Positions 1-34,514 of a DNA stretch of 64,000 nucleotides are shown piece after piece (position 1 is the stretch's first letter; every line of letters begins with the position of its first letter). The notes under the pieces are model-generated. The model worked only from the letters and a program-made list of their open reading frames with translations. It searched no databases and had not been told where the DNA came from. The stretch covers positions 1 through 64,000 of the IMG/VR virus record IMGVR_UViG_3300025770_000870; one strand, 5' to 3'. A program made the position numbers and the translations under genes.

Positions 1-112
1 CACCACCTTTTGTCTCTGTTCTAATCCTTCTATCTATATAGAAAATTCCTTCGTTGGTTTCCACTTTTACAGTTCCACCATCTCTATATACGTCTATGTT
101 ATTTATTATCAT
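1..112 (-). CDS. Array micro-gene, truncated by window edge
   Basis: ATG from the repeat at 110-112; MIINNIDVYRDGGTVKVETNEG... stays open to position 1. Confidence 0.7.
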   Translation of the reverse strand, partial: MIINNIDVYRDGGTVKVETNEGIFYIDRRIRTETKGG

Positions 113-234
113 CTTTGTTTTGGTTTATTGAATTTAGCAAAGTATTCGAATCCCTCTTTTATAGTCTTAAAAAACATTGGTTTATTGAATGGTCCTTTTT
201 TAGGTTTCTCAAATAACTTTTTATTTGCCTTCAT
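109..234 (-). CDS. Array micro-gene, 41 aa, basic
   Basis: Manual translation MKANKK...FNKPKQR*; starts and stops in junction repeats. Confidence 0.65.
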   Translation of the reverse strand: MKANKKLFEKPKKGPFNKPMFFKTIKEGFEYFAKFNKPKQR

Positions 235-400
235 CTTTGTTTTGTTCGTATTCATAAAATTCTTTAATAAAAACTACTACTTCATTGGGTACAGGTATCA
301 TGTCACCATAACTTGTCTGATGCTCCATAAGACCTCTTTCTAGTAGAGAAGATATCCAACCTGAATATTCTTCTGGTATATTTAACGTTAATTTACTCAT
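221..400 (-). CDS. Array micro-gene, 59 aa
   Basis: Manual translation MSKLTLNIPEEYSGW...EQNKDEGK*. Confidence 0.65.
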   Translation of the reverse strand: MSKLTLNIPEEYSGWISSLLERGLMEHQTSYGDMIPVPNEVVVFIKEFYEYEQNKDEGK

Positions 401-642
401 CTTCGTTTTGGTTTAAATTCAATGTACTTATTAAATTGTCTTTTATATTCATCCCACTCTTCACTTGTTGGTGGTGTTTCTCTATCTAACCAACTCTTAA
501 TATCAATCTCTAACTTTAATCTAAGGTTGTTTGTTGCTTTGTCTATTCCTATGTCAATCATCTTTGTTTTGGTTAATTTATTGTATCTTTCGGCAATATC
601 AGACATTACTTCTCCTATATGTTTTGGTTCTCTTTTATTCAT
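397..642 (-). CDS. Array micro-gene; apparent read-through fusion of two units
   Basis: ORF track. Internal repeat at 559 lacks one A and reads LTKTKM. Ends KPKRR. Confidence 0.7.
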   Translation of the reverse strand: MNKREPKHIGEVMSDIAERYNKLTKTKMIDIGIDKATNNLRLKLEIDIKSWLDRETPPTSEEWDEYKRQFNKYIEFKPKRR

Positions 643-779
643 CTTTCGTTTGGTTTAATTTTCTTAAACTTTGCCTTACCATCTTTATCATAACCAATAA
701 ACTTCACATCTGGTATTGTGAAACAAAACTCTTTTATTGGTATGTGTGGTACATATTTGTAACCTTCTTTGCTCATCAT
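639..779 (-). CDS. Array micro-gene, 46 aa
   Basis: Manual translation MMSKEGYKYVPHIP...KIKPNER*. Confidence 0.65.
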   Translation of the reverse strand: MMSKEGYKYVPHIPIKEFCFTIPDVKFIGYDKDGKAKFKKIKPNER

Positions 780-1036
780 CTTTGTTTTGGTTTAATTATA
801 GGATTCGGTTCTTCAAATAAACAGAAACGTTTACATTTCCCACCTTCCACATCGACCATATCAAACCATTGGGATAATGGTCGAGTGTAATAACTACCGA
901 ATTCTTGCGATTGATAGACTACTGTTATTTCGTCATTTACTGTGTTTTTAGCTAAGTGTAAAACTTCATAAGTTCCACCTTTATAGTGTTGGTAGATTCT
1001 ATTAAATTGTGGATATGTTTCTCTTTTATTTTTCAT
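776..1036 (-). CDS. DUF1653-family protein (array unit)
   Basis: YQHYKGGTYEVLHLA...VVYQ...YYTRPLSQW matches the DUF1653 pattern; ends KPKQR. Confidence 0.75.
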   Translation of the reverse strand: MKNKRETYPQFNRIYQHYKGGTYEVLHLAKNTVNDEITVVYQSQEFGSYYTRPLSQWFDMVDVEGGKCKRFCLFEEPNPIIKPKQR

Positions 1037-1172
1037 CTTTGTTTTGGTTTAGTATGTGTCTAATAAAGAAATTAACTCTGTCTTCAATATCTTTATCATT
1101 ATCTCTTGGTTTGAATTTCATTCCATTATCTTCAACCCATTCTTTAATATCACAGGCACATCTTTTATTTCT

Positions 1173-1430
1173 CTACTCATCTTGTTTTGGTTTAAATGTT
1201 TTTATTATTTCACCTCTCTTATCTCCTATACCCATTTGATAGTATTCATAACTTCTCGGTGGTTTTGAAAATACGTGTTCTTCATTAGATTCACAATACT
1301 CCCATTGAGGTCCATCAAAAGTCATATCCATCCAATTTGATATAATATACAAATCAGAGTTGCATATCGGACATTTATCACTTGATAACGTTTTTTCCTC
1401 GTAATGACTTAAATTATCTAACTTACTCAT
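1173..1430 (-). CDS. Array micro-gene with CPIC...C-x4-H putative zinc ribbon
   Basis: ORF track; bounded by repeats. Confidence 0.65.
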   Translation of the reverse strand: MSKLDNLSHYEEKTLSSDKCPICNSDLYIISNWMDMTFDGPQWEYCESNEEHVFSKPPRSYEYYQMGIGDKRGEIIKTFKPKQDE

Positions 1431-1545
1431 CTTTGTTTTGGTTTTTATGTTTAACTTTAGTAGTTCTTTTTGCCAAATATCTATTTAACCATTTATCAGA
1501 CCACCATTTACCCTTAAACTTTTTTATAATGTCTTTTTTACTCAT
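1423..1545 (-). CDS. Array micro-gene, 40 aa, very basic
   Basis: Manual translation MSKKDIIKKFKGKWW...KNQNKDE*. Confidence 0.6.
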   Translation of the reverse strand: MSKKDIIKKFKGKWWSDKWLNRYLAKRTTKVKHKNQNKDE

Positions 1546-1625
1546 CTTCTTTGTTTTGGTTTAATAGCCACATTAAAACGTGGATTAACATTATTTAAAA
1601 ACCATTGAAACGGTTTTTATTTTTG

Positions 1626-1853
1626 TTACCTACAATTAAAAGTTTTTACAACTGTTTTTTTTGGTGGTCTACTATTTGTTTTATCAATTTCAATTAACTT
1701 TTCTGCTTCCTCAATAGTTCTGTATGTATTTATAGGGTATCTTTTTTCATTTTGTATTTGAAACCAAAATGGATAATACCATAGTCGTTTTTGCACTTCA
1801 AAACCACCAAATTTATCTGTTACTATCCTGTATTGTGTTTTACATATTCTCAT
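1626..1853 (-). CDS. Hypothetical phage protein (array)
   Basis: ORF track; YRIV...FEVQKR..FW pattern typical of small phage proteins. Confidence 0.7.
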   Translation of the reverse strand: MRICKTQYRIVTDKFGGFEVQKRLWYYPFWFQIQNEKRYPINTYRTIEEAEKLIEIDKTNSRPPKKTVVKTFNCR

Positions 1854-1899
1854 TATTTCTATATTTTCTTTTACTCATCTTTGTTTTGGTTTAAATATG

Positions 1900-1992
1900 T
1901 TATTTTTGTCTAAATCCAATAACCGTTACAAATATGGCTATGTATATTAATACACAGAATTGTAAATAATCTATTACTTCTTTCTCATTCAT
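1900..1992 (-). CDS. Array micro-gene, 30 aa, single TM
   Basis: MNEKEVIDYLQFCVLIYIAIFVTVIGFRQK*. Confidence 0.55.
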   Translation of the reverse strand: MNEKEVIDYLQFCVLIYIAIFVTVIGFRQK

Positions 1993-2158
1993 CTTCTTTG
2001 TTTTGGTTTAAGAGATCTATTAATTTCTTATCTTTTTTGTTTGGAATGAATTCGTTATTTCTGAATTTGCGTAATTCGTTTCTTCCATACATTTCTAAAA
2101 TATATCCTTCTACTCTTATAACATTAAATTCTTTGTTTGTCTTTATTACTTTACTCAT
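1985..2158 (-). CDS. Array micro-gene, 57 aa
   Basis: Manual translation MSKVIKTNKEF...LNQNKEDE*. Confidence 0.6.
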   Translation of the reverse strand: MSKVIKTNKEFNVIRVEGYILEMYGRNELRKFRNNEFIPNKKDKKLIDLLNQNKEDE

Positions 2159-2170
2159 CTTTGTTTTGGT

Positions 2171-2365
2171 TTAATATCTTAATTTTATTTGGTCATAGTC
2201 AGTATCGTAATACTCACCATTATCTTCTTTGTGTTTTCTTATTAGTTGGTCAAGTAAGATTTCACAAAGTCCCACTTCTGAACAATCACCTTTATCCCAA
2301 CCCATATAATTCTGTTTGGTTATGGTATCACCCATGTCTAATAGTTCTTCTATCTTATCTATCAT
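2171..2365 (-). CDS. Array micro-gene, paralog of 3378..3587
   Basis: Shares MIDKIEELLDMGDTIT...KGDCSEVGLCEILLDQLIRKHKE...IKLRY. Confidence 0.8.
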   Translation of the reverse strand: MIDKIEELLDMGDTITKQNYMGWDKGDCSEVGLCEILLDQLIRKHKEDNGEYYDTDYDQIKLRY

Positions 2366-2571
2366 CGTTCTTTAATTAAATAATCTTTTAACCCTTCTAT
2401 CCAAGTTGGAATCATACTATAATATTGGTGTGACGAAGAACTAAATCTCATATTCCTATTATCTTCATAGTATTGATATTTATCTTTTAGTTCTTGTATT
2501 TTACTTTCAACATCTTCTACGGTTGAAACTTTTATCATACTCACTATTTCTTCCTTAATTAATGTATTCAT
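2362..2571 (-). CDS. Array micro-gene, hypothetical
   Basis: ORF track; ATGA overlap with the next gene. Confidence 0.7.
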   Translation of the reverse strand: MNTLIKEEIVSMIKVSTVEDVESKIQELKDKYQYYEDNRNMRFSSSSHQYYSMIPTWIEGLKDYLIKER

Positions 2572-2827
2572 CTTTGTCTAAATTATCTTGAATATATTCT
2601 CTTATCATTTTAGGTGTTATATTACAACCACCATGTTCAATTTCATATTCACCGAATCCAAGTTCACTAAATTCTACTCTCTTTATAATTTGTTTAGTGC
2701 TGGGGTTATATATTCTCACCTCTGCTTTTTTATCTATATCATGTTCTATGATATATTTCCATTCCACACCTTTTACATTTATATTTCTGAGTTTAAGCAC
2801 TTTAATTCTAAAATTCTTCCGTTTCAT
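2555..2827 (-). CDS. Array micro-gene, hypothetical
   Basis: ORF track. Confidence 0.7.
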   Translation of the reverse strand: MKRKNFRIKVLKLRNINVKGVEWKYIIEHDIDKKAEVRIYNPSTKQIIKRVEFSELGFGEYEIEHGGCNITPKMIREYIQDNLDKDEYIN

Positions 2828-2901
2828 CTCTTTCTAATTTTTCTTCTTTCTTGGGAGTTTAGGTCTTGGTTCCCACTTTATATAGATTATTCCTTCTTTA
2901 C

Positions 2902-3186
2902 TCATCTTTGTTTTGGTTTAACTACCCATTGGTCTCTTGTTTCTTCGTACCTAACATACGTTCCTATATCTGTGTTAGTTATCCAAACCTTTTTTCTAGG
3001 TGTTTCTTTATTTGGCGAAAATAATACTTTATGGAATTGATATACCTTTCCATTAGTTAATGATTCATGGTTTCCTATATACTTTTTATAGATATATGTT
3101 GGATTAGGGTTATCGTCTGATGTTACATATCTAACATGAGGAAACACGAATACTTCTTCTATATTTATTTTATCTTCTTTACTCAT
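2902..3186 (-). CDS. Array micro-gene, hypothetical
   Basis: ORF track; MSKEDKI...KPKQR, repeat to repeat. Confidence 0.75.
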   Translation of the reverse strand: MSKEDKINIEEVFVFPHVRYVTSDDNPNPTYIYKKYIGNHESLTNGKVYQFHKVLFSPNKETPRKKVWITNTDIGTYVRYEETRDQWVVKPKQR

Positions 3187-3365
3187 CTTTGTTTTGGTTT
3201 AATCCATCCATTATTAGATATAGCTATTTTTGCTCCCATCATAAATGCATTCAATGTTGGTATAGTAGGTTCTGCACCAACCAAATCACACCATTGTTCT
3301 GCTATTTCTTTTAGTTCTTTATCTGAACATATAGGAATTAGTGGTAAATAATCAGTTTTCTTCAT
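3183..3365 (-). CDS. Array micro-gene, hypothetical
   Basis: ORF track; ends KPKQR. Confidence 0.75.
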   Translation of the reverse strand: MKKTDYLPLIPICSDKELKEIAEQWCDLVGAEPTIPTLNAFMMGAKIAISNNGWIKPKQR

Positions 3366-3377
3366 CTTTGTTTTGGT

Positions 3378-3587
3378 TTAGTATCTTAATTTAATTTCAT
3401 CATAATCCCTATCATACCACTCTCCATTCTCTTCCTTATGTTTTCTTATCAATTGGTCTAATAGTATTTCACATAAGCCTACTTCTGAACAATCACCCTT
3501 ATTCCAAATGGAAAATTTCCGTTCAGCAGAACAAAGATCAGTTATGGTGTCACCCATGTCTAATAGTTCTTCTATCTTATCTATCAT
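3378..3587 (-). CDS. Array micro-gene, paralog of 2171..2365
   Basis: Near-identical protein; repeat to repeat. Confidence 0.8.
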   Translation of the reverse strand: MIDKIEELLDMGDTITDLCSAERKFSIWNKGDCSEVGLCEILLDQLIRKHKEENGEWYDRDYDEIKLRY

Positions 3588-3599
3588 CTTTGTTTTGGT

Positions 3600-3815
3600 T
3601 TAATCCTTAAATACGGGTGTATAATTTCTATATTTTTTTCTTAGTACATCATAAGACATATCCCAGCCATCTTCTCTGATAACCTTACTGTGTAATATCG
3701 GAGGATGAGAAGAACCTATTTTATCTTCAACCCATTTTAATCTTTTCTTTAGTTCTTGATTTTCATACTCAAGTAACCTTACTCTTTCTTTTAATTCTTT
3801 ATTAAAAATCATCAT
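3600..3815 (-). CDS. Array micro-gene with N-terminal coiled coil
   Basis: ORF track; LKERVRLLEYENQELKKRL. Confidence 0.7.
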   Translation of the reverse strand: MMIFNKELKERVRLLEYENQELKKRLKWVEDKIGSSHPPILHSKVIREDGWDMSYDVLRKKYRNYTPVFKD

Positions 3816-3833
3816 CTTTGTTTTGGTTTATAA

Positions 3834-3929
3834 TTACAGTGAAACTCCTAATGCAAAACCTATTACAAAACCAATACTAATCCCTATTGATAAAGCTACG
3901 TCCATATGTTTACTAGTATATTTACTCAT
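3834..3929 (-). CDS. Array micro-gene, 31 aa, TM with GxxxG repeats
   Basis: MSKYTSKHMDVALSIGISIGFVIGFALGVSL*. Confidence 0.6.
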   Translation of the reverse strand: MSKYTSKHMDVALSIGISIGFVIGFALGVSL

Positions 3930-4147
3930 CTTTGTTTTGGTTTAACATATTTAATGTCTTCCTCATCTTTAATATCCAATACCCATTCCATTAAATCAAT
4001 CATACTGCATTGTTGGTTGAATTGTTCTCTTTTTTCAGATATACCCCACAAACCTTTATATGGTGGATTATTTAAAAAATGAGCTAATTCATCCTTATGT
4101 TTATTCATTTCTATTAACTTGTTATATATTTCTTCTCTACTTCTCAT
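3926..4147 (-). CDS. Array micro-gene, hypothetical
   Basis: ORF track; ends KPKQR. Confidence 0.75.
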   Translation of the reverse strand: MRSREEIYNKLIEMNKHKDELAHFLNNPPYKGLWGISEKREQFNQQCSMIDLMEWVLDIKDEEDIKYVKPKQR

Positions 4148-4418
4148 CTTTATTTTGGTTTATTTTAATAGAATAAATACATAATTCTTTATCCAAAAAT
4201 TCATTCAACTTTTTTTCTATCTTTTCTCTGTCTTTAATAGTATTGTCAACTCCGTTGTTAAAACTTTCCCACATTATCAGTAAGGATTTTATTTCTTCTT
4301 TATTCATATCTTATTTATTTCATTCCACCATATAATCTTTGGTCTAATATACTGTTGATGATGACTCCATTTGGCTTTTATCCTTATTATGTCACTTTCT
4401 GTTTTACTCATCTTTGTT

Positions 4419-4586
4419 TTATTTGTTAAATGAATCTAGATATCTGTTAACTTCTTCTTGGTGATTCGGTCCGAAGAAATCATCATATAGCTTTCTTATC
4501 TCATTAATCTCTTTTTGTAACTTTGCTGCCAATTTAAAGTCTTCGTTCTCTATTGATACTTTAAGTTTTTCTAATAAAATATTCAT
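4419..4586 (-). CDS. Array micro-gene, 55 aa, UVR (UvrB/UvrC) motif-like
   Basis: LKVSIENEDFKLAAKLQKEI resembles the UVR consensus A-x-x-x-EDFE-x-AA-x-LRD-x-I. Confidence 0.55.
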   Translation of the reverse strand: MNILLEKLKVSIENEDFKLAAKLQKEINEIRKLYDDFFGPNHQEEVNRYLDSFNK

Positions 4587-4599
4587 CTTTGTTTTAGTT

Positions 4600-4731
4600 T
4601 TAATAAGCTAATTCTAAAGTAAACTTTAGAAAGTGAAAGCTAAAACATTTATATTCTACGTGTAAATTAAATGTTGGTATCAAATACCAATCATCTTTTG
4701 CCCACCATTCTATATTAATTTCTTTAATCAT
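4600..4731 (-). CDS. Array micro-gene, 43 aa
   Basis: MIKEINIEWWAKDDWYLIPTFNLH...LAY*. Confidence 0.6.
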   Translation of the reverse strand: MIKEINIEWWAKDDWYLIPTFNLHVEYKCFSFHFLKFTLELAY

Positions 4732-5010
4732 CTTTGTTTTGGTTTAAATTTGAGCTCTTCTTCTATTATCTTCACCATTTCATCAAAAGTAACACCCTTT
4801 TCGTCTGCCTGTTGTTTATTAAATCTACTATCACCAAATATAAATTTCTGCTTTATTATGACCCGTTTTATCTGTACCCATTTTTGACATCAATATTAAC
4901 TTTCCACCACCATCAAATGTAATGGTAATTTTATTGTTTTTTGGGCTAGTCTTAATATCCTTTATCGTTTTACCTGAATATTCACCTTCTTTAATCATCT
5001 TTGTTTTGGT

Positions 5011-5229
5011 TTAATCTAAATCTAATTCATTTTTCATAAATGCTTCCCATATCAGTTCACGTAATGCTGTTTCTTGTAATGGTTTTGTACCAGGTTTTGT
5101 ATCAAATGTAGGAAGTACATCAATATCCAATATGGTCTTCAAGTCATCACTGATAGTTACGTGGTATTCTACTCCTTCGTGTACTACTTCTAATATGAAT
5201 CTTGTGTGTATTTTATTTACTTTACTCAT
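5011..5229 (-). CDS. Array micro-gene, hypothetical
   Basis: ORF track; stop is the TAA of the repeat. Confidence 0.75.
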   Translation of the reverse strand: MSKVNKIHTRFILEVVHEGVEYHVTISDDLKTILDIDVLPTFDTKPGTKPLQETALRELIWEAFMKNELDLD

Positions 5230-5401
5230 TGTTGTTTTGGTTTATTAATTCTTCTTTGAATTCTTTCCAATATGTTTGTGTTGAACTATATTGTTTCTCT
5301 AAAATGGTATCATTTACAATTTGTAATGCTTTTTTAAAACCTTCCCTTTGTAACATTATTGAGACTTGGTTTTCCATTGGTGATAATTTTCTTTTACTCA
5401 T
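5222..5401 (-). CDS. Array micro-gene, 59 aa
   Basis: MSKRKLSPMENQ...INQNNNE*. Confidence 0.65.
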   Translation of the reverse strand: MSKRKLSPMENQVSIMLQREGFKKALQIVNDTILEKQYSSTQTYWKEFKEELINQNNNE

Positions 5402-5525
5402 CTTTGTTTTGGTTTTTTCTCATTTGTATTTGAAATATATTACCTAAACAGAATCCTATCATCACACAAAATATCCCAATTGATATTAGTTGGGGGAATG
5501 TATATAAATCTATTTCACTCATCAT
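5394..5525 (-). CDS. Array micro-gene, 43 aa, single TM
   Basis: MMSEIDLYTFPQLISIGIFCVMIGFCLGNIFQIQMRKNQNKDE*. Confidence 0.6.
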   Translation of the reverse strand: MMSEIDLYTFPQLISIGIFCVMIGFCLGNIFQIQMRKNQNKDE

Positions 5526-5541
5526 CTTTGTTTTAGTTTAA

Positions 5542-5907
5542 TTAATCCCACCATCCTTGGATATTATGTTCAATATACTTCCATAGTAATTGGTGAGCTC
5601 TTTCTTGTTTTTCAATTGCTTCCTTTATGGTAAGTTTTCCTTTATAAAAATCTTCCATATACTCTTCATCATATACTTTATCCATCAATCTAATTGCAGT
5701 ACGAATCTTTTGAGCATGTATATTAGAATCAACAGTATATGATTTATCTGACTCTAATAAATCAGCAGTACGTTCTAATTGATATCTGAATAGTTCTATT
5801 GCATGAACATAATCAAAATCATATCCTTTCCAAATAATAGGTAGGAAATCCCATACACGTTTTAAGCGTCTAAAGAACCATGTTATGTTATTATAAATCT
5901 TCTTCAT
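5542..5907 (-). CDS. Hypothetical phage protein
   Basis: ORF track; WDFLPIIWK..DFDY...GWWD terminus typical of phage hypotheticals. Confidence 0.8.
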   Translation of the reverse strand: MKKIYNNITWFFRRLKRVWDFLPIIWKGYDFDYVHAIELFRYQLERTADLLESDKSYTVDSNIHAQKIRTAIRLMDKVYDEEYMEDFYKGKLTIKEAIEKQERAHQLLWKYIEHNIQGWWD

Positions 5908-6146
5908 CTTTTATACTTTCTTATCAGTTTGAAAATTTCTGTTATATCAGTAAACTGTATTTCTTGTCCTTGTTTAATCGGTGTAAATGCTACTGTGAAT
6001 CCATGATTAGCTTGAAATGTCTCAGTAACACTTTTACCATTTATGCGTTCTATGTAAATCCAAGGGTAGTTACCACTAAGCTTTACTTCTACACCTATCT
6101 TTTGTAGTCTTCCTATAAATACTGTTATTTTATCTTCTTTAATCAT
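5904..6146 (-). CDS. First gene of the array, hypothetical
   Basis: ORF track; GNYPWIY. Confidence 0.75.
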   Translation of the reverse strand: MIKEDKITVFIGRLQKIGVEVKLSGNYPWIYIERINGKSVTETFQANHGFTVAFTPIKQGQEIQFTDITEIFKLIRKYKR

Positions 6147-6195
6147 CTTTGTTTTAATTTCAGTAGTATTTCTTATTAAAATTCATCAATATCCA

Positions 6196-6228
6196 TAAAT
6201 ATACGGATATTATATTGGTTATACAAAA
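6196..6228 (-). promoter_or_regulatory. Putative early promoter driving the micro-gene array (Bacteroidota sigma70-like)
   Basis: Minus strand TTTGTATAACCAATATAATATCCGTATATTTA: TTTG (-33) and a TAnnTTTG-like (-7) box. The same 20-mer core recurs at 9938-9957. Confidence 0.6.
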
Positions 6229-6285
6229 ATATGTGATTAATTCTGTATAGTTTCTCCTCATTTCATATTTTATATATATGAAAAG

Positions 6286-7392
6286 ATGATTTTAGAAAAA
6301 GTAAGATTCACCAAAACAGGTGACAAGGAATTTTATAAAGTACTCAGAAAGCGTGTTAACGCTTACTTTAAAGAAAAAGGTATTTCAAAATTTGCAAACG
6401 TAAACATGGTATTGAAAACTATATTTATGTTGGCTTTATACTTAACACCTTTCATACTAATACTCACAACACTTTCTTCTTCTTTATTAATTATATTGAT
6501 GTGGATGTTGATGGGGTTTGGAATGGCAGGAATTGGCCTTTCAATAATGCACGATGCTAATCACAGCGCATACTCGAAGAATAAACACGTTAATTTATTT
6601 ATGGGAAAACTGATTTGGTTAGTTGGTGGTAGTGATGTAAACTGGAGGATTCAACATAATGTTTTACACCACACTTATACAAATGTACATGGAATGGATG
6701 AAGACATTGAAATTGATCCATTAATGCGTTTTTCACCAAATCAAAAATTGAGAAAGGGTCATAAGTTTCAGTTTATTTATGCATGGTTCCTTTATGGCAT
6801 GATGACTATGATGTGGGCAACAACTAAAGATTATTCTCAATGGAAAAGATATAAGAATAAAGATTTAATTAAAACACAGGGGTTATCAAGTAAGAGTTTT
6901 CTTTGGACTTTAATTTCAACAAAAACTATTTATTTAATACTTACTCTTGGTCTACCATTACTTATAGGGTCAATGCCTTGGCACCAAACAGTATTATGTT
7001 TCTTATTAATGCACTTTATTGCTGGTGTAACATTAGCATCAATTTTCCAACCAGCACACGTTGTTCCTTCATCAGATTATTCAAAGCCTGATGAAAACGG
7101 AAATGTAGAAGTATCTTGGGCAGAAAACCAATTAATGAACACAACGAACTTCGCACCAAAAGCACGTTTATTTTCTTGGTATGTAGGTGGGTTAAACTAT
7201 CAAATAGAACACCACTTATTTCCAAATATTTGTCATGTTCATTACCGTAAGATTTCAAAAATTGTAAGAGATACTGCATTTGAATACGAACTACCTTATC
7301 ATTCCTATAAAACATTTTATGAGGCTCTATCAAACCATACAAAGATGCTTTATACTTTAGGAAGAGTTGAAGACGCTCCAGTAATACATTAA
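6286..7392 (+). CDS. Membrane fatty acid (acyl-CoA) desaturase
   Basis: Three His boxes HDANH, HNVLHH, QIEHHLFP; TM segments. Confidence 0.93.
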   Translation: MILEKVRFTKTGDKEFYKVLRKRVNAYFKEKGISKFANVNMVLKTIFMLALYLTPFILILTTLSSSLLIILMWMLMGFGMAGIGLSIMHDANHSAYSKNKHVNLFMGKLIWLVGGSDVNWRIQHNVLHHTYTNVHGMDEDIEIDPLMRFSPNQKLRKGHKFQFIYAWFLYGMMTMMWATTKDYSQWKRYKNKDLIKTQGLSSKSFLWTLISTKTIYLILTLGLPLLIGSMPWHQTVLCFLLMHFIAGVTLASIFQPAHVVPSSDYSKPDENGNVEVSWAENQLMNTTNFAPKARLFSWYVGGLNYQIEHHLFPNICHVHYRKISKIVRDTAFEYELPYHSYKTFYEALSNHTKMLYTLGRVEDAPVIH

Positions 7393-7450: not shown

Positions 7451-8131
7451 TTATTTCAAAAATTGAACATGAATAACAGATTCTCCCGTTAAAGGTTTTG
7501 TTGGTGGACAAGCGGCTAAAGCTTCATCATATTCTATTTGTGCAGCGACTTCGTCTGATTTTGCATCACTAGCATTCCCACTTGTTATAGCTTTTGCTGC
7601 TCCAGCTCCAGTTGCAGCGGATGCTGCTAAAGCATTTGCCGCTGATGCTGCTGTTAAGGCTGTAGTACAAGTTGCTAGTGTAGCTGACGCGGTCACAAGT
7701 GCAGCAGATGTAATAGCTTCGGCCGCTACCGCAATTGCTTCTGTATCGGTCGCTCCTGCAAGCCATAATGCTGCGGCTGCCGTTGCCGCTTCAGATGGTC
7801 CAAAATCCCAAAATGGAATCCAATTTGATGCGGCTGCCGCGGTTACAGCTACTCCAGCTGCCGCAACATCTGCAGTTGCTGCTGTAAGTGTTGCTGTAGC
7901 TGCCGTCTCAGCTGTTACTGCTAATGCTTGTGCGGTAACAGCTGCTACTTGTGCACTGCTCGCAACTGCATTTGCGCTTGCTGCTAGTGTAGCAGCCGCA
8001 GAAGCTGCGATGAGTGTATCATTGGCAATACTATCAGCCTTTGATGCACTAACTAATTTTGACTTTGCTACTGCTAAAGCTTGTGTAGCATCAACCAAAC
8101 GTTCTTGTGGTGTTCTTTTATCTCCTGTCAT
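7451..8131 (-). CDS. Ala-rich heptad-repeat helical hairpin protein
   Basis: Ala at every 7th residue from 15 to 99; central WIPFWDFGP hinge. Confidence 0.8.
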   Translation of the reverse strand: MTGDKRTPQERLVDATQALAVAKSKLVSASKADSIANDTLIAASAAATLAASANAVASSAQVAAVTAQALAVTAETAATATLTAATADVAAAGVAVTAAAASNWIPFWDFGPSEAATAAAALWLAGATDTEAIAVAAEAITSAALVTASATLATCTTALTAASAANALAASAATGAGAAKAITSGNASDAKSDEVAAQIEYDEALAACPPTKPLTGESVIHVQFLK

Positions 8132-14109: not shown

Positions 14110-14183
14110 TGAGCCCGAAAGGATTCGAACCTTTGACCGCCTCCTTAGAAGGGAGGTGCTCTATCCAGCTGAGCTACGGGCCC
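14110..14183 (-). tRNA. trnR: tRNA-Arg (anticodon TCT)
   Basis: GGGCCCGTAGCTCAGCTGGATAGAGCA-CCTCC CT TCT AA GGAGG-CGGTCAAAGGTTCGAATCCTTTCGGGCTCA forms a full cloverleaf; CCA not encoded. Confidence 0.96.
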
Positions 14184-14315: not shown

Positions 14316-15083
14316 TTATATCTCTTTTTTTACTTCATCTGAAAGAAAATAAGAGAAACCTCCAACAACAATTGGCCAATCATTTAAATGTATTAATGAA
14401 TCATGGAAATCCTCACTTGACATAGATAAGAACTTTTCATAAGATAAATTATGATTAATATCATCCGATATATTGGTTCTCATTATGGTCTCTAGTAATT
14501 TATGTCTATGTGGAGTAGCTCTTCTGTCTATCTTGTATAAATAACCATTTGTTGTTAATTTTGTAAATTTACCGAAATTGCTTTCGTTATATTTTTCCGA
14601 GGGTTGTGAAAAATCATATTCCATTGTATCGAATTGAACTTTTCCATCAATTATTTTTTTATATGAAGGTATTTTAATAAAAATCTGGTTGTCTTCTGTG
14701 ATTCTAGGAAATAACCAATCTTCAAAGGGTTTATCTTTATTGTATTCTATTAATTCACGTTTTGAAAATAAACTAAGTGGTTTACTTGTTACTGAAATAT
14801 CTAATAATAAACTATATCGATTTAAAGCAATATTATTAAGTGTATTCATATCCTCTTCTACTTGACTCCAATCTGTATTTTCATCATAATCATGTAAAAG
14901 ATATAAATCTAAATCCCATGTCGTTTTTTTATATAAGAATCCTCCAACAATTAATATTTTATATTTAATTGCTAATGGTGAGATTTCGTTATCCTGAAAA
15001 AACGCTCTTACAACTTCATATGATGGTTGAAACCATACGTTGTCTGTTGTTATACTACCAATTTGGTAAAAAAATGATTTCAT
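14316..15083 (-). CDS. Putative Pol-beta-superfamily nucleotidyltransferase
   Basis: VGGFL-x5-WDLDL resembles the hG[GS]...DxD motif. Confidence 0.5.
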   Translation of the reverse strand: MKSFFYQIGSITTDNVWFQPSYEVVRAFFQDNEISPLAIKYKILIVGGFLYKKTTWDLDLYLLHDYDENTDWSQVEEDMNTLNNIALNRYSLLLDISVTSKPLSLFSKRELIEYNKDKPFEDWLFPRITEDNQIFIKIPSYKKIIDGKVQFDTMEYDFSQPSEKYNESNFGKFTKLTTNGYLYKIDRRATPHRHKLLETIMRTNISDDINHNLSYEKFLSMSSEDFHDSLIHLNDWPIVVGGFSYFLSDEVKKEI

Positions 15084-15097
15084 CTTATTTACTTGTT

Positions 15098-15358
15098 TTA
15101 ATCTTTTAATTCAATCATTTCACATATCATATCAAACTGTTTTATACTATTGCACTTACCATTGTATTTAACTGAGTAATTTGGCCCATCTTGATTAAAT
15201 CCTTCATCTGTTGATGTTATAATAATCCTACCATTTGTAACACTAAGAAATGCTCCTTGTCCATTATCTTTCCATATATCACCCTTCTGAAATTTTTGTT
15301 CATTATGTATATCGTATTTGAATTCCCAACCTCTTTCTTCTATTTCTTCTTTACTCAT
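15098..15358 (-). CDS. Hypothetical, preceded by a variant junction repeat
   Basis: ORF track; TAAACCAAATGAAAGATG start context. Confidence 0.75.
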   Translation of the reverse strand: MSKEEIEERGWEFKYDIHNEQKFQKGDIWKDNGQGAFLSVTNGRIIITSTDEGFNQDGPNYSVKYNGKCNSIKQFDMICEMIELKD

Positions 15359-15370
15359 CTTTCATTTGGT

Positions 15371-15808
15371 TTAATATCCTATTCTACTTCCACGAACAAT
15401 ATATGTAATTTCATTCATTACTCTACCTGCTATGATTGCATCATGTCTCTGTTCTATAACCTGATAAACGTGTGTGAAATTGTCATTGATATGTTGTTCT
15501 AATTGTTTCTTTATCTCGTTGTTATCAGATACGCTTGAGAAGTTTTTTCTTAATTCACCTATTCTCTGTAATGGTGCCTTTCTCATATAAACTTCATGTG
15601 AACTACCTTTATACTTAAAGTTTGGACTATGAACAATCTTATCATTCAAATCCAATTCATTCATTGGTATGTCATATCGCCAAGGTTTGTTAGTATCATC
15701 AATCTCTGATGTTTGTTCTTCTTTGAACTTATCCCATGCTCCTGACCATTTTGGATCTGACCACATAGATTGGTTTCCAAACTTATCTTTAATTATTTCA
15801 CTGTTCAT
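15371..15808 (-). CDS. Hypothetical, preceded by an exact junction repeat
   Basis: Exact 18-mer at 15806-15823. Confidence 0.75.
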   Translation of the reverse strand: MNSEIIKDKFGNQSMWSDPKWSGAWDKFKEEQTSEIDDTNKPWRYDIPMNELDLNDKIVHSPNFKYKGSSHEVYMRKAPLQRIGELRKNFSSVSDNNEIKKQLEQHINDNFTHVYQVIEQRHDAIIAGRVMNEITYIVRGSRIGY

Positions 15809-15835
15809 CTTTGTTTTGGTTTATAATATTATAGA

Positions 15836-34354: not shown

Positions 34355-34514
34355 TATCTTCGTTTTGGTTTAGTAGTTTATAAACTTGACAATACTCTCC
34401 ATGTTCTAGTTTCTCTGTGTGATTTTTCCATTTAAGAATTTATACACATTTTTGGTGTATTTGTTTACTCTCTAATCAATATTTTGAATGGTGATGAGTA
34501 AAGGTTACCAACAC

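What the first reader, a model, noticed from the sequence alone, without database searches (positions are those of the whole stretch)
2171..3587. Duplicated array unit with a swapped internal segment
Seen: 2171..2365 and 3378..3587 encode near-identical proteins, both ending at the repeat TAA, and are separated by five unrelated units. They differ mainly in one block (KQNYMGWD vs DLCSAERKFSIWN). Inference: a non-tandem copy bounded by the junction is internal evidence that units move as discrete cassettes, possibly two alleles acquired from relatives.
Basis: partly seen in the sequence, partly recalled or inferred. Interest (0 to 1): 0.65.

Follow-up and report, generated by a model that had tools for sequence, protein, structure and literature searches.

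The report
Two mosaic alleles in phage cassette array
An uncultured giant phage carries two diverged, recombinant versions of one tiny gene inside a long row of mini-genes, and comparison with related metagenome contigs shows that these mini-genes are swapped as whole units at a short repeat that sits at nearly every gene boundary.

Summary
2171-2365 (64 aa) and 3378-3587 (69 aa), both on the minus strand, are the only paralogues in a unidirectional array of at least 31 mini-genes (1-6261). Most boundaries in the array are an 18-23 nt stop/start junction (TTAAACCAAAACAAAG-ATGA-nTAA).

The pair is not an assembly chimera. Four other contigs from independent assemblies carry both copies in the same order.

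It is not a recent local duplication either:
- The 3' 120 nt differ at 25 sites (dN 0.08, dS saturated).
- The 5' 46 nt differ at 1 site.

Metagenomic alleles show a three-part mosaic:
- Copy A has the 5' 72 nt of the common 'P0003' allele and the 3' 120 nt of the L027/L028 allele.
- Copy B has the P0003 backbone with a replaced 26-nt block plus a 15-nt insertion.
- On contig L017, which shares copy B's two downstream units (100% aa identity), the gene is the P0003 allele and carries copy A's block.

Near-identical strains (99.4-100% over the shared stretches) differ by whole-unit deletions and replacements, and the breakpoints lie inside the junction. The family gene has 41 different upstream and 44 different downstream neighbour families.

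The closest known mechanism is PeSL-mediated shuffling in T4-type phages, but this junction has neither a promoter nor a terminator. The protein's function is unknown: it is predicted as a small helical bundle with no fold match.

The parts
1..6261 (-). Unidirectional array of at least 31 mini-genes (29-121 aa) that runs off the left end of the contig. It holds 25 of the 30 junction-repeat copies found in the genome.
2171..2365 (-). Copy A, 64 aa. It is a chimeric allele with a P0003-type 5' 72 nt and an L027/L028-type 3' 120 nt.
3378..3587 (-). Copy B, 69 aa. It has the P0003-type backbone with a replaced block and a 15-nt insertion. The exact protein is indexed in 94 blocks of the public collection.
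2320..2365 (-). Segment S1 of copy A (first 46 nt). It differs at 1 of 46 sites from S1 of copy B (3542-3587).
2294..2319 (-). Block (S2) of copy A, encoding KQNYMGWD. It is identical (0/26) to the block of the P0003 allele.
3501..3541 (-). Block (S2) of copy B, encoding DLCSAERKFSIWN. Against copy A it has 11/26 differences plus the 15-nt insertion; against the P0002 allele (L018), which lacks the insertion, it has 2/26.
3527..3541 (-). 15-nt insertion specific to copy B. Twelve nt (3527-3538) are 92% complementary to the gene's own leader junction (3586-3597). This is one of only two local inverted repeats found in the 6.4-kb array.
2174..2293 (-). Segment S3 of copy A (last 120 coding nt). 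It differs at 25/120 sites from copy B and at 0/120 from L027/L028.
3381..3500 (-). Segment S3 of copy B. It is identical (0/120) to the P0003 and P0002 alleles.
2156..2173 (-). Junction repeat after copy A. Its TAA is copy A's stop. Contig L020 diverges from the window just past this junction.
3363..3380 (-). Junction repeat after copy B. Its TAA is copy B's stop. Contigs L098 and L099 diverge from the window here.
3585..3602 (-). Junction repeat that forms copy B's leader and start codon. Homology between L017 and the window begins here.
2362..3365 (-). Four unrelated units between the copies: 3183-3365, 2902-3186, 2555-2827 and 2362-2571. The last two and copy A lack a canonical junction upstream.

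Best explanation
The two ORFs are two anciently diverged alleles of one small ORFan protein family. The family encodes 64-72 aa proteins predicted as a small helical bundle, and it was found here only on metagenomic contigs, several of them over 100 kb, from uncultured phages (samples include Tara Oceans marine ones). Both alleles now sit in the same mini-gene array of a roughly 270-kb myovirus. Array units behave as cassettes. Almost every gene boundary is the same 18-23 nt stop/start junction. It is one-orientation and specific to the array. All 31 starts read ATGA, which gives a stop in the +1 frame; stops lie in the other two frames at 22 and 21 of the 31 junctions. This short identical sequence serves as the crossover point for homologous or microhomology recombination, which deletes, inserts and replaces whole units. 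Because the junction ends translation in any frame and restarts it, a swapped-in unit would remain expressed. Recombination also occurs inside the cassette: copy A is a crossover product of a P0003-type allele (5' 72 nt) and an L027-type allele (3' 120 nt). At copy B's locus the population carries at least three block variants on one otherwise identical backbone (KQNYMGWD, KRKFSIWN, DLCSAERKFSIWN). The block lies in helix 2, on the most variable stretch of the protein. Shown here: the coordinates, the mosaic structure, the breakpoints in the junction, the diversity of contexts, and the independent assemblies. Inferred: that the junction is the recombination substrate rather than merely marking selected gene borders; that it mediates termination and reinitiation; and that the block is a target-contact surface under diversifying pressure.
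For: Array and junction: 29 matches in the window against 0.24 expected, all in one orientation; 30 in the genome, 25 of them within 1-6161; consensus and frame-stop counts. The junction is array-specific: other genes have generic A/T-rich leaders, 4.8% have an SD-like motif, and G at -1 occurs in only 8%. Segment table: A vs B 1/46, 11/26 plus a 15-nt gap, 25/120; P0003 vs B 0/46 and 0/120 but P0003 vs A 0/26 in the block; L027/L028 vs A 0/120 but 6/46 and 6/26. S3 dN 0.08 with dS saturated. L017 carries the P0003 allele followed by units 100% identical (aa) to 3183-3365 and 2902-3186. Strain variants: L095/L097 delete about 1445-1996, with the crossover inside the AAACCAAAACAAA core; L098 shares only 3362-3823 at 100%; L099 diverges at 3359; L020 replaces about 1872-2141. 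Homology ends: median 9 nt from a unit ATG, 90% within 25 nt against 26% at random. Neighbour families: 41 in 73 upstream, 44 in 77 downstream. Both copies lie on L095, L096, L097 and L100. Only this lineage shows two copies. Family entropy is 1.37 bits in the block against 0.65 elsewhere. AF2 models: copy A pLDDT 92.8 with the block in helix 14-27; copy B pLDDT 73.1 with the same helix order and a longer loop between helices 1 and 2.
Against: Breakpoints at gene borders can also arise from random illegitimate recombination followed by selection for intact genes. The end-points counted are not independent events, and many involve the same family gene. Copy A has no canonical junction upstream, so its 5' border is not junction-bounded. 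No recombinase was found on the contig: no RecA/UvsX, no tyrosine integrase. The source of the KRKFSIWN block was not found anywhere. The protein's function is unknown.
Confidence: 0.75

Rival explanations
1. An ordinary local duplication within this genome, followed by divergence. Under this reading, positive selection concentrated amino-acid change in the block, and later gene conversion homogenised the 5' end. No cassette exchange with other phages is needed.
For: Two copies lie 1 kb apart in the same array and orientation. The 5' 46 nt are nearly identical, as intragenomic gene conversion would produce. The block is the most variable part of the family.
Against: Copy A's 3' 120 nt are identical to alleles on L027/L028 in unrelated contexts, and copy B's backbone is identical to P0003 alleles in several other contexts. 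dS between the 3' parts is saturated, although relatives with up to 4-8 kb of flank on each side show a single copy. Homology excludes all flanks.
Confidence: 0.12
2. The copy-B block was made in place by template-switch (quasi-palindrome) mutagenesis rather than imported. The KRKFSIWN block is a near-perfect 23-nt palindrome at a site that is already quasi-palindromic in other alleles. The extra 15 nt would have been copied from the complementary strand of the gene's own leader junction.
For: Arm complementarity at the same 23-nt position is 10/11 in the KRKFSIWN allele, 9/11 in the KSNYMIWD allele and 7/11 in the KQNYMGWD allele. Genome-wide frequencies per position are 7e-5 for at least 10/11 and about 7e-4 for at least 9/11. 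The 9-11 substitutions sit in 26 nt, while the other 166 nt of the backbone are identical or nearly so. The insertion (3527-3538) is 92% complementary to 3586-3597, one of only two local inverted repeats in 6.4 kb. No donor for the block exists in the contig or in 90 related loci.
Against: This is a post hoc pattern with look-elsewhere corrections of order 0.005-0.05. Across 36 family alleles the hairpin is hardly better than controls: 55.6% of cells paired against 52% when shuffled. The RNA fold of copy B's 5' region is not significant (z -1.8) and the minimum-energy structure does not use the leader-insertion pairing. About 11% of the genome is missing, so a donor could lie there.
Confidence: 0.25
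3. The assembly is a chimera of two co-occurring strains, so that one real locus appears twice.
For: Contigs L020 and L089, from other samples, break exactly at the edge of copy B's block (3494, 3487). This shows strain polymorphism there.
Against: L095, L096, L097 and L100, from different samples and assemblers, span both copies and the four units between them at 99.4-100% identity to the window. The two copies have different flanks and differ at 25/120 sites in S3.
Confidence: 0.01
4. The block is a variable region written by a diversity-generating retroelement or another targeted hypermutation system.
For: Clustered nonsynonymous change in a short patch of an otherwise conserved gene.
Against: There is no reverse transcriptase on the contig and no template-like second copy of either block. 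The substitutions are not adenine-specific (alignment). The patch is only 26 nt.
Confidence: 0.02

Closest known systems
PeSL (promoter-early stem-loop) cassettes of T4-type phages (Arbiol et al. 2010, PMC2839356; Comeau et al. 2014, PMC4122927)
   Same: Short repeated motifs lie at the borders of small, mostly ORFan genes in hyperplastic regions of large myoviruses. Insertions, deletions and replacements between closely related phages have their breakpoints in the motif. This phage also has a T4-like portal.
   Different: A PeSL is a sigma-70 promoter plus a stem-loop terminator followed by an SD. Here the motif is 18-23 nt and abuts the ATG directly. It has no -35/-10 pair, no stem-loop and no SD. 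Promoter-like sites in the array are fewer than in shuffles, and terminator-like sites are at background. The units look like one long operon joined by stop/start junctions.
Start-associated sequences (SAS) of Cluster K mycobacteriophages (Pope et al. 2011, PMC3203893)
   Same: A short asymmetric repeat, in one orientation, lies a few nt upstream of the start codons of a subset of non-structural genes. It has a strong ATG preference, the upstream gene's stop sometimes lies inside the repeat, and its function is unknown but thought to involve translation initiation.
   Different: The SAS (GGGATAGGAGCCC) contains an SD core and is scattered across half the genome. It was not reported as a recombination breakpoint. 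The motif here is A-rich, has no SD, is concentrated in one contiguous array and demonstrably marks exchange points.
Integron gene-cassette arrays
   Same: A unidirectional array of small, apparently promoter-less ORFs that are gained, lost and reordered as units at a repeated boundary sequence.
   Different: There is no attC-like imperfect palindrome and no tyrosine recombinase on the contig. The boundary here overlaps the stop and start codons.
Boundary/linker-sequence model of phage mosaicism (Susskind and Botstein modular theory; lambdoid boundary sequences). Cited from my own knowledge, not retrieved here.
   Same: Short conserved sequences at gene borders are proposed as sites of homologous exchange between otherwise unrelated modules.
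   Different: Here the linker is nearly identical at about 25 consecutive borders of one array, and the exchange is documented among near-identical strains.

Membership tests
PeSL cassette (T4-type phages) | Sigma-70-like early promoter inside the repeated motif | tested here: not met
   26 promoter-like sites in 1-6500 against 39.4 +/- 6.2 in shuffles, none tied to the junction. The junction consensus has no -35/-10 pair.
PeSL cassette (T4-type phages) | Stable stem-loop terminator/attenuator in the motif | tested here: not met
   2 terminator-like sites against 1.8 expected, none at a junction. Only 2 local inverted repeats in 6.4 kb.
PeSL cassette (T4-type phages) | The motif flanks small ORFan genes, and the indels or replacements between close relatives break inside it | tested here: met
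   No Pfam or PHROG family for most units.
PeSL cassette (T4-type phages) | Excised mini-circles formed by recombination between neighbouring motifs | not testable with these tools
   Needs reads or PCR across circle junctions.
Start-associated sequence (Cluster K mycobacteriophages) | Asymmetric short repeat in one orientation, within a few nt of ATG starts of non-structural genes | tested here: met
   30 of 30 genome copies lie on one strand. The repeat abuts the ATG, and all 31 unit starts are ATG.
Start-associated sequence (Cluster K mycobacteriophages) | Contains a Shine-Dalgarno core able to pair with 16S rRNA; sequence GGGATAGGAGCCC | tested here: not met
   The junction is AAACCAAAACAAAG with no GGAG/AGGA. 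Only 4.8% of long ORFs in the genome have an SD-like motif.
Integron cassette array | attC recombination site (imperfect inverted repeats) at each cassette end | tested here: not met
   No inverted repeats at the junctions.
Integron cassette array | IntI-type tyrosine recombinase next to the array | tested here: not met
   PF00589 is absent from the 241,918-bp contig, which is 89% complete. The ten ORFs next to the array have no Pfam family.
Diversity-generating retroelement target | Reverse transcriptase plus template repeat; adenine-specific differences | tested here: not met
   No RVT_1, no second copy of the block, and the differences are not A-specific.

The most novel reading that the evidence does not exclude
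The junction is a dedicated cassette-docking element of a phage-borne shuffling system that resembles an integron in outcome but needs no integrase. In this reading it is a roughly 20-nt sequence that does three jobs at once: (i) it stops translation in all three frames, (ii) it restarts translation without an SD, and (iii) it provides the homology for unit exchange. Any mini-gene captured from a relative would then be expressed at once from one operon. On top of this, the family studied here would diversify a helix-2 contact patch through quasi-palindrome-templated mutation. That would give a two-level diversification scheme (unit shuffling plus in-place patch rewriting) for what are probably host-takeover or counter-defence proteins.
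Probability: 0.2. Interest if true: 0.75.

Novelty: new variant of a known kind. Interest (0 to 1): 0.5.

Why it matters
Large phages carry long runs of tiny genes of unknown function, and these are thought to be a reservoir of host-takeover and anti-defence proteins. How such genes turn over is documented mainly for PeSLs in T4-type coliphages and vibriophages.

This locus gives a clean natural record of the same process in an uncultured, SD-independent jumbo phage, but through a different boundary element. Near-identical strains differ by whole units, crossovers fall inside a 13-18 nt core, and one gene family is caught as two co-resident mosaic alleles.

The junction motif also offers a simple sequence handle. 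It could be used to harvest this class of cassette genes from metagenomes and to define unit borders without gene prediction.

Tried and rejected
- **Phage record searches.** DNA and the protein against the phage collection found no match to the array or the family. Related metagenomic loci were found by other routes.
- **Family scans.** Pfam and PHROGs on both copies and eight neighbouring units gave nothing significant, except phrog_38683 for 5904-6146.
- **Fold searches.** The confident copy-A model was searched against PDB (Foldseek), a wide PDB search with VIA-align, BFVD and the ESM Atlas. Only generic helical-bundle hits came back (best Z 4.6, TM below 0.6), so there is no functional lead. 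The Atlas feature search gave no usable hit.
- **RNA hairpin between copy B's insertion and its leader.** The fold z-score was -1.8 (11 of 200 shuffles fold as well) and the minimum-energy structure uses other pairs. The result is inconclusive.
- **Conserved hairpin over the block across the family.** 55.6% of cells paired against 52% when shuffled, and slid controls were similar. Not supported as a family-wide structure.
- **Donor search for either block.** Nothing was found in the genome or in 90 loci beyond 9-mers that match the junction.
- **Rfam.** Only one tRNA in the window.
- **Enzymes.** RecA/UvsX, reverse transcriptase and tyrosine integrase are all absent from the contig.
- **Junction pattern in other records.** It is absent from LR745206.1 and from three IMG/VR relatives, so the motif is lineage-specific.
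- **A close-relative check.** LR745206.1 has a portal 92.5% identical in protein sequence, but it shares almost no DNA similarity with 16-24 kb of the window. It is therefore not a close relative.
Full report
**Context**

The window is the first 64 kb of a single 241,918-bp virus contig (29.9% GC, linear, CheckV estimate 89% complete). It appears in the metagenome collection as Ga0209362_1000008.

It encodes a T4-like portal (Pfam Portal_T4, E 2e-56) and baseplate and tail-lysozyme domains. The portal is 92.5% identical in protein sequence to one in the 634,780-bp uncultured phage record LR745206.1 and about 31% identical to those of Prevotella Lak phages. DNA similarity to LR745206.1 elsewhere is negligible.

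Only 4.8% of long ORFs have a Shine-Dalgarno-like motif, and leaders are A/T-rich. The host therefore probably initiates translation without SD pairing. A Bacteroidota-like host is my inference and was not tested.

**The array**

From 6261 down to base 1, and off the contig end, the minus strand carries at least 31 tightly packed ORFs of 29-121 aa.

- The 18-mer CATCTTTGTTTTGGTTTA (plus strand) occurs 29 times in the window with up to 3 mismatches, against 0.24 expected, and always in one orientation.
- The whole genome holds 30 copies, 25 of them within 1-6161.
- On the coding strand the consensus is TTAAACCAAAACAAAG-ATGA-nTAA.
- All 31 unit starts read ATGA, which gives a stop in the +1 frame. 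22 have a stop in frame 0 just upstream and 21 have a stop in frame +2 just downstream.
- The repeat is read in all three frames by upstream genes, producing the tails KPKQR*, NQNKDE* or a stop at the TAA. It is therefore conserved as nucleic acid, not as protein.
- It is not the genome's general leader: G at -1 occurs in 8% of other long ORFs.
- Sigma-70-type promoter-like sites are fewer than in shuffles, terminator-like sites are at background, and Rfam finds nothing in the array.

The simplest reading is one leftward operon with stop/start coupling at each junction. This is inferred.

**The observation**

Copy A (2171-2365, 64 aa) and copy B (3378-3587, 69 aa) are real ORFs at the stated coordinates.

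- They align over 234 nt at 77% identity (E 4e-48), the only substantial paralogy in the region.
- They are the only two hits of the family profile in the whole contig.
- Homology covers the CDS and the junction that follows it, and nothing else.
- Four ORFs lie between them, not five.
- Copy A has no canonical junction upstream; it overlaps the preceding gene by ATGA.

**Not an assembly artefact**

The exact copy-B protein, insertion included, is indexed in 94 blocks of the public collection. Contigs L095, L096, L097 and L100, from other samples and assemblers, carry copy B, the four intervening units and copy A in the same order. They are 99.4-100% identical to the window.

**The family**

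A word search found 45 homologues of 54-102 aa in metagenomes, with no Pfam domain and no name. Contig scans then returned 5 viral and 75 metagenomic loci, several on contigs of 108-272 kb.

The AlphaFold2 model of copy A is confident (pLDDT 92.8) and shows helices at 2-8, 14-27, 30-52 and 55-59. The block (residues 17-24) lies in helix 2 and is the most variable stretch of the family: mean column entropy is 1.37 bits against 0.65 elsewhere. The WDKGDCSEVGLCEILL core is almost invariant.

Copy B models with lower confidence (pLDDT 73.1), the same helix order and a longer loop between helices 1 and 2. No structural or sequence search gave a functional lead.

**The mosaic**

I split the gene into three segments: S1 (first 46 nt), S2 (the block) and S3 (last 120 coding nt). 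Differences between alleles are as follows.

| Comparison | S1 | S2 | S3 |
|---|---|---|---|
| Copy A vs copy B | 1/46 | 11/26 + 15-nt indel | 25/120 |
| P0003 allele vs copy B | 0/46 | 11/26 + 15-nt indel | 0/120 |
| P0003 allele vs copy A | 1/46 | 0/26 | 25/120 |
| L027/L028 allele vs copy A | 6/46 | 6/26 | 0/120 |
| P0002 allele (L018) vs copy B | 2/46 | 2/26, no insertion | 0/120 |

- In S3, dN between the copies is 0.08 and dS is saturated. The two backbones are therefore old and under purifying selection. S1 is far too similar for the same age: about 10 differences would be expected and 1 is seen.
- The 'P0003' allele was found on nine contigs (L015-L017, L021-L026).
- Copy A is therefore a crossover product of a P0003-type 5' part and an L027-type 3' part. 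The switch falls in the conserved core just after the block.
- Copy B is the P0003 backbone with a different block.
- L017 carries the P0003 allele followed by units 100% identical (aa) to 3183-3365 and 2902-3186. The block is thus polymorphic at the locus that shares copy B's downstream context.
- Contigs L020 and L089 from other samples end exactly at the edge of the block (3494, 3487). Assembly graphs fork in this way at a polymorphic site.

**Cassette behaviour**

Among strains 99.4-100% identical to the window over the shared stretches:

- L095 and L097 lack about 1445-1996 (three units). The two flanks overlap by 13 nt inside the AAACCAAAACAAA core.
- L098 shares only 3362-3823 (unit 3600-3815 plus copy B) at 100%. 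Both ends fall in junctions.
- L099 follows the window from 6587 to 3359, then continues with the units that follow the P0003 allele on L015.
- L020 replaces about 1872-2141.

Across all loci, 125 internal homology end-points lie a median of 9 nt from a unit start. 90% are within 25 nt, against 26% for random positions. These end-points are not independent events.

The family gene has 41 distinct upstream neighbour families in 73 contigs and 44 distinct downstream families in 77 contigs. The identical P0003 allele alone has at least 3 upstream and 5 downstream contexts.

Within the flanks available, only the window's lineage carries two copies. The more distant IMG/VR loci (L001-L003) use a variant junction, AAACCAAAACAA-TAGAAAGTT-ATGA, which again has stops in three frames. 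The exact motif is absent from LR745206.1 and from three IMG/VR relatives.

**Origin of copy B's block**

This is unresolved. No donor was found in the contig or in 90 loci. Two observations point to templated mutation rather than import.

- The KRKFSIWN block is a 23-nt near-palindrome (10/11 arm pairs). The KSNYMIWD and KQNYMGWD alleles score 9/11 and 7/11 at the same position. Genome-wide frequencies are about 7e-5 and 7e-4 per position for at least 10 and at least 9 pairs.
- Twelve nt of the copy-B insertion (3527-3538) are 92% complementary to the gene's own leader junction (3586-3597). This is one of only two local inverted repeats in the 6.4-kb array.

Both are post hoc patterns. The family-wide hairpin test is weak and the RNA fold is not significant. 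I rate this origin at about 0.25.

A DGR is excluded as far as the contig goes: there is no RT, no template copy, and the changes are not A-specific.

**Comparison with known systems**

The closest mechanism is PeSL-mediated modular shuffling in T4-type phages (PMC2839356, PMC4122927). However, the two defining parts of a PeSL, a sigma-70 promoter and a stem-loop terminator, were tested and are absent.

In position and orientation the junction resembles the start-associated sequences of Cluster K mycobacteriophages (PMC3203893), but it has no SD core. It resembles an integron array in outcome, but has no attC-like palindrome and no integrase.

I therefore class it as a new variant of a known kind. 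The duplicated unit is a good internal witness of that variant, not a new phenomenon in itself.

**Limits**

- No reads could be examined.
- No expression data are available.
- The host and the protein's function are unknown.
- About 11% of the genome is missing.
- The role of the junction as recombination substrate and as reinitiation signal is inferred from position and breakpoints, not shown.

Noticed in passing
window 1-6261 (all unit starts): All 31 unit starts read ATGA, against 62% of other long ORFs. The junction carries stops in all three frames, so upstream ORFs end in it whatever their frame (tails KPKQR*, NQNKDE*).
   Followed up: partly
window 15098-15823: A second mini-array: junction copies at 15356-15373 and 15806-15823 flank minus-strand ORFs 15098-15358 and 15371-15808. 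On contig L024 the homologue of 15081-15375 (88% nt) lies about 200 nt downstream of the P0003-type family gene, so units also move between the main array and this site. Further degenerate junction copies lie at 34355 and 44301, and at 148143 outside the window.
   Followed up: partly
window 1876-1893 and 1854-1875: An 'orphan' junction: a perfect repeat followed by ATG and a mini-ORF of only about 12 codons. The next real gene (1626-1853) starts from a non-canonical leader. This may be the scar of a unit deletion.
   Followed up: no
window 6286-7392 (+): A fatty-acid desaturase gene (PF00487 in the precomputed annotation of L094) lies divergently next to the head of the array. It is a possible auxiliary metabolic gene.
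   Followed up: no
window 7451-8131 (-): A 226-aa ORF extremely rich in Ala, Thr and Ser, in a 30% GC genome. It has no Pfam family and its composition is out of keeping with its surroundings.
   Followed up: no
window 14110-14183 (-): One tRNA gene (Rfam tRNA, 70 bits). DNA about 77% identical to this stretch also occurs on contigs L011 and L012 a few kb downstream of the family gene.
   Followed up: no
L033:328-783; L005:7983-8190 (G001:C1:233197-233383): On L033 the family gene has lost its stop at the junction and is fused in frame to the next unit (151 aa). On the 251-kb IMG/VR contig the gene is split by a frameshift or stop. Both show what happens when the junction frames are disturbed.
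   Followed up: no
L001, L002, L003 (e.g. L001:454-477): The more distant IMG/VR loci L001-L003 use a longer variant junction (AAACCAAAACAA-TAGAAAGTT-ATGA), again with stops in three frames. L005 has yet another (…AAAAATAGAAGTTT-ATGA). The junction appears to evolve as a lineage-specific signal.
   Followed up: partly
L001:1014-1971 vs G000:C1:231629-232565: In these distant relatives the family gene sits next to a 364-aa gene. Its homologue in this genome lies at about 231.6 kb, near the other contig end. This suggests the array and the right end are neighbours across the unassembled gap.
   Followed up: no
G000:C1 about 241,800-241,900 (outside the window): The contig ends in four tandem copies of an 18-nt unit (GATGCTGAAGAGTCGGGT) inside an acidic ORF. 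This may be why the assembly stopped there.
   Followed up: no
window 776-1036 and 5904-6146: These are the only array units with any family label: DUF1653 (precomputed annotation) and phrog_38683 (E 2e-20, unknown function).
   Followed up: no
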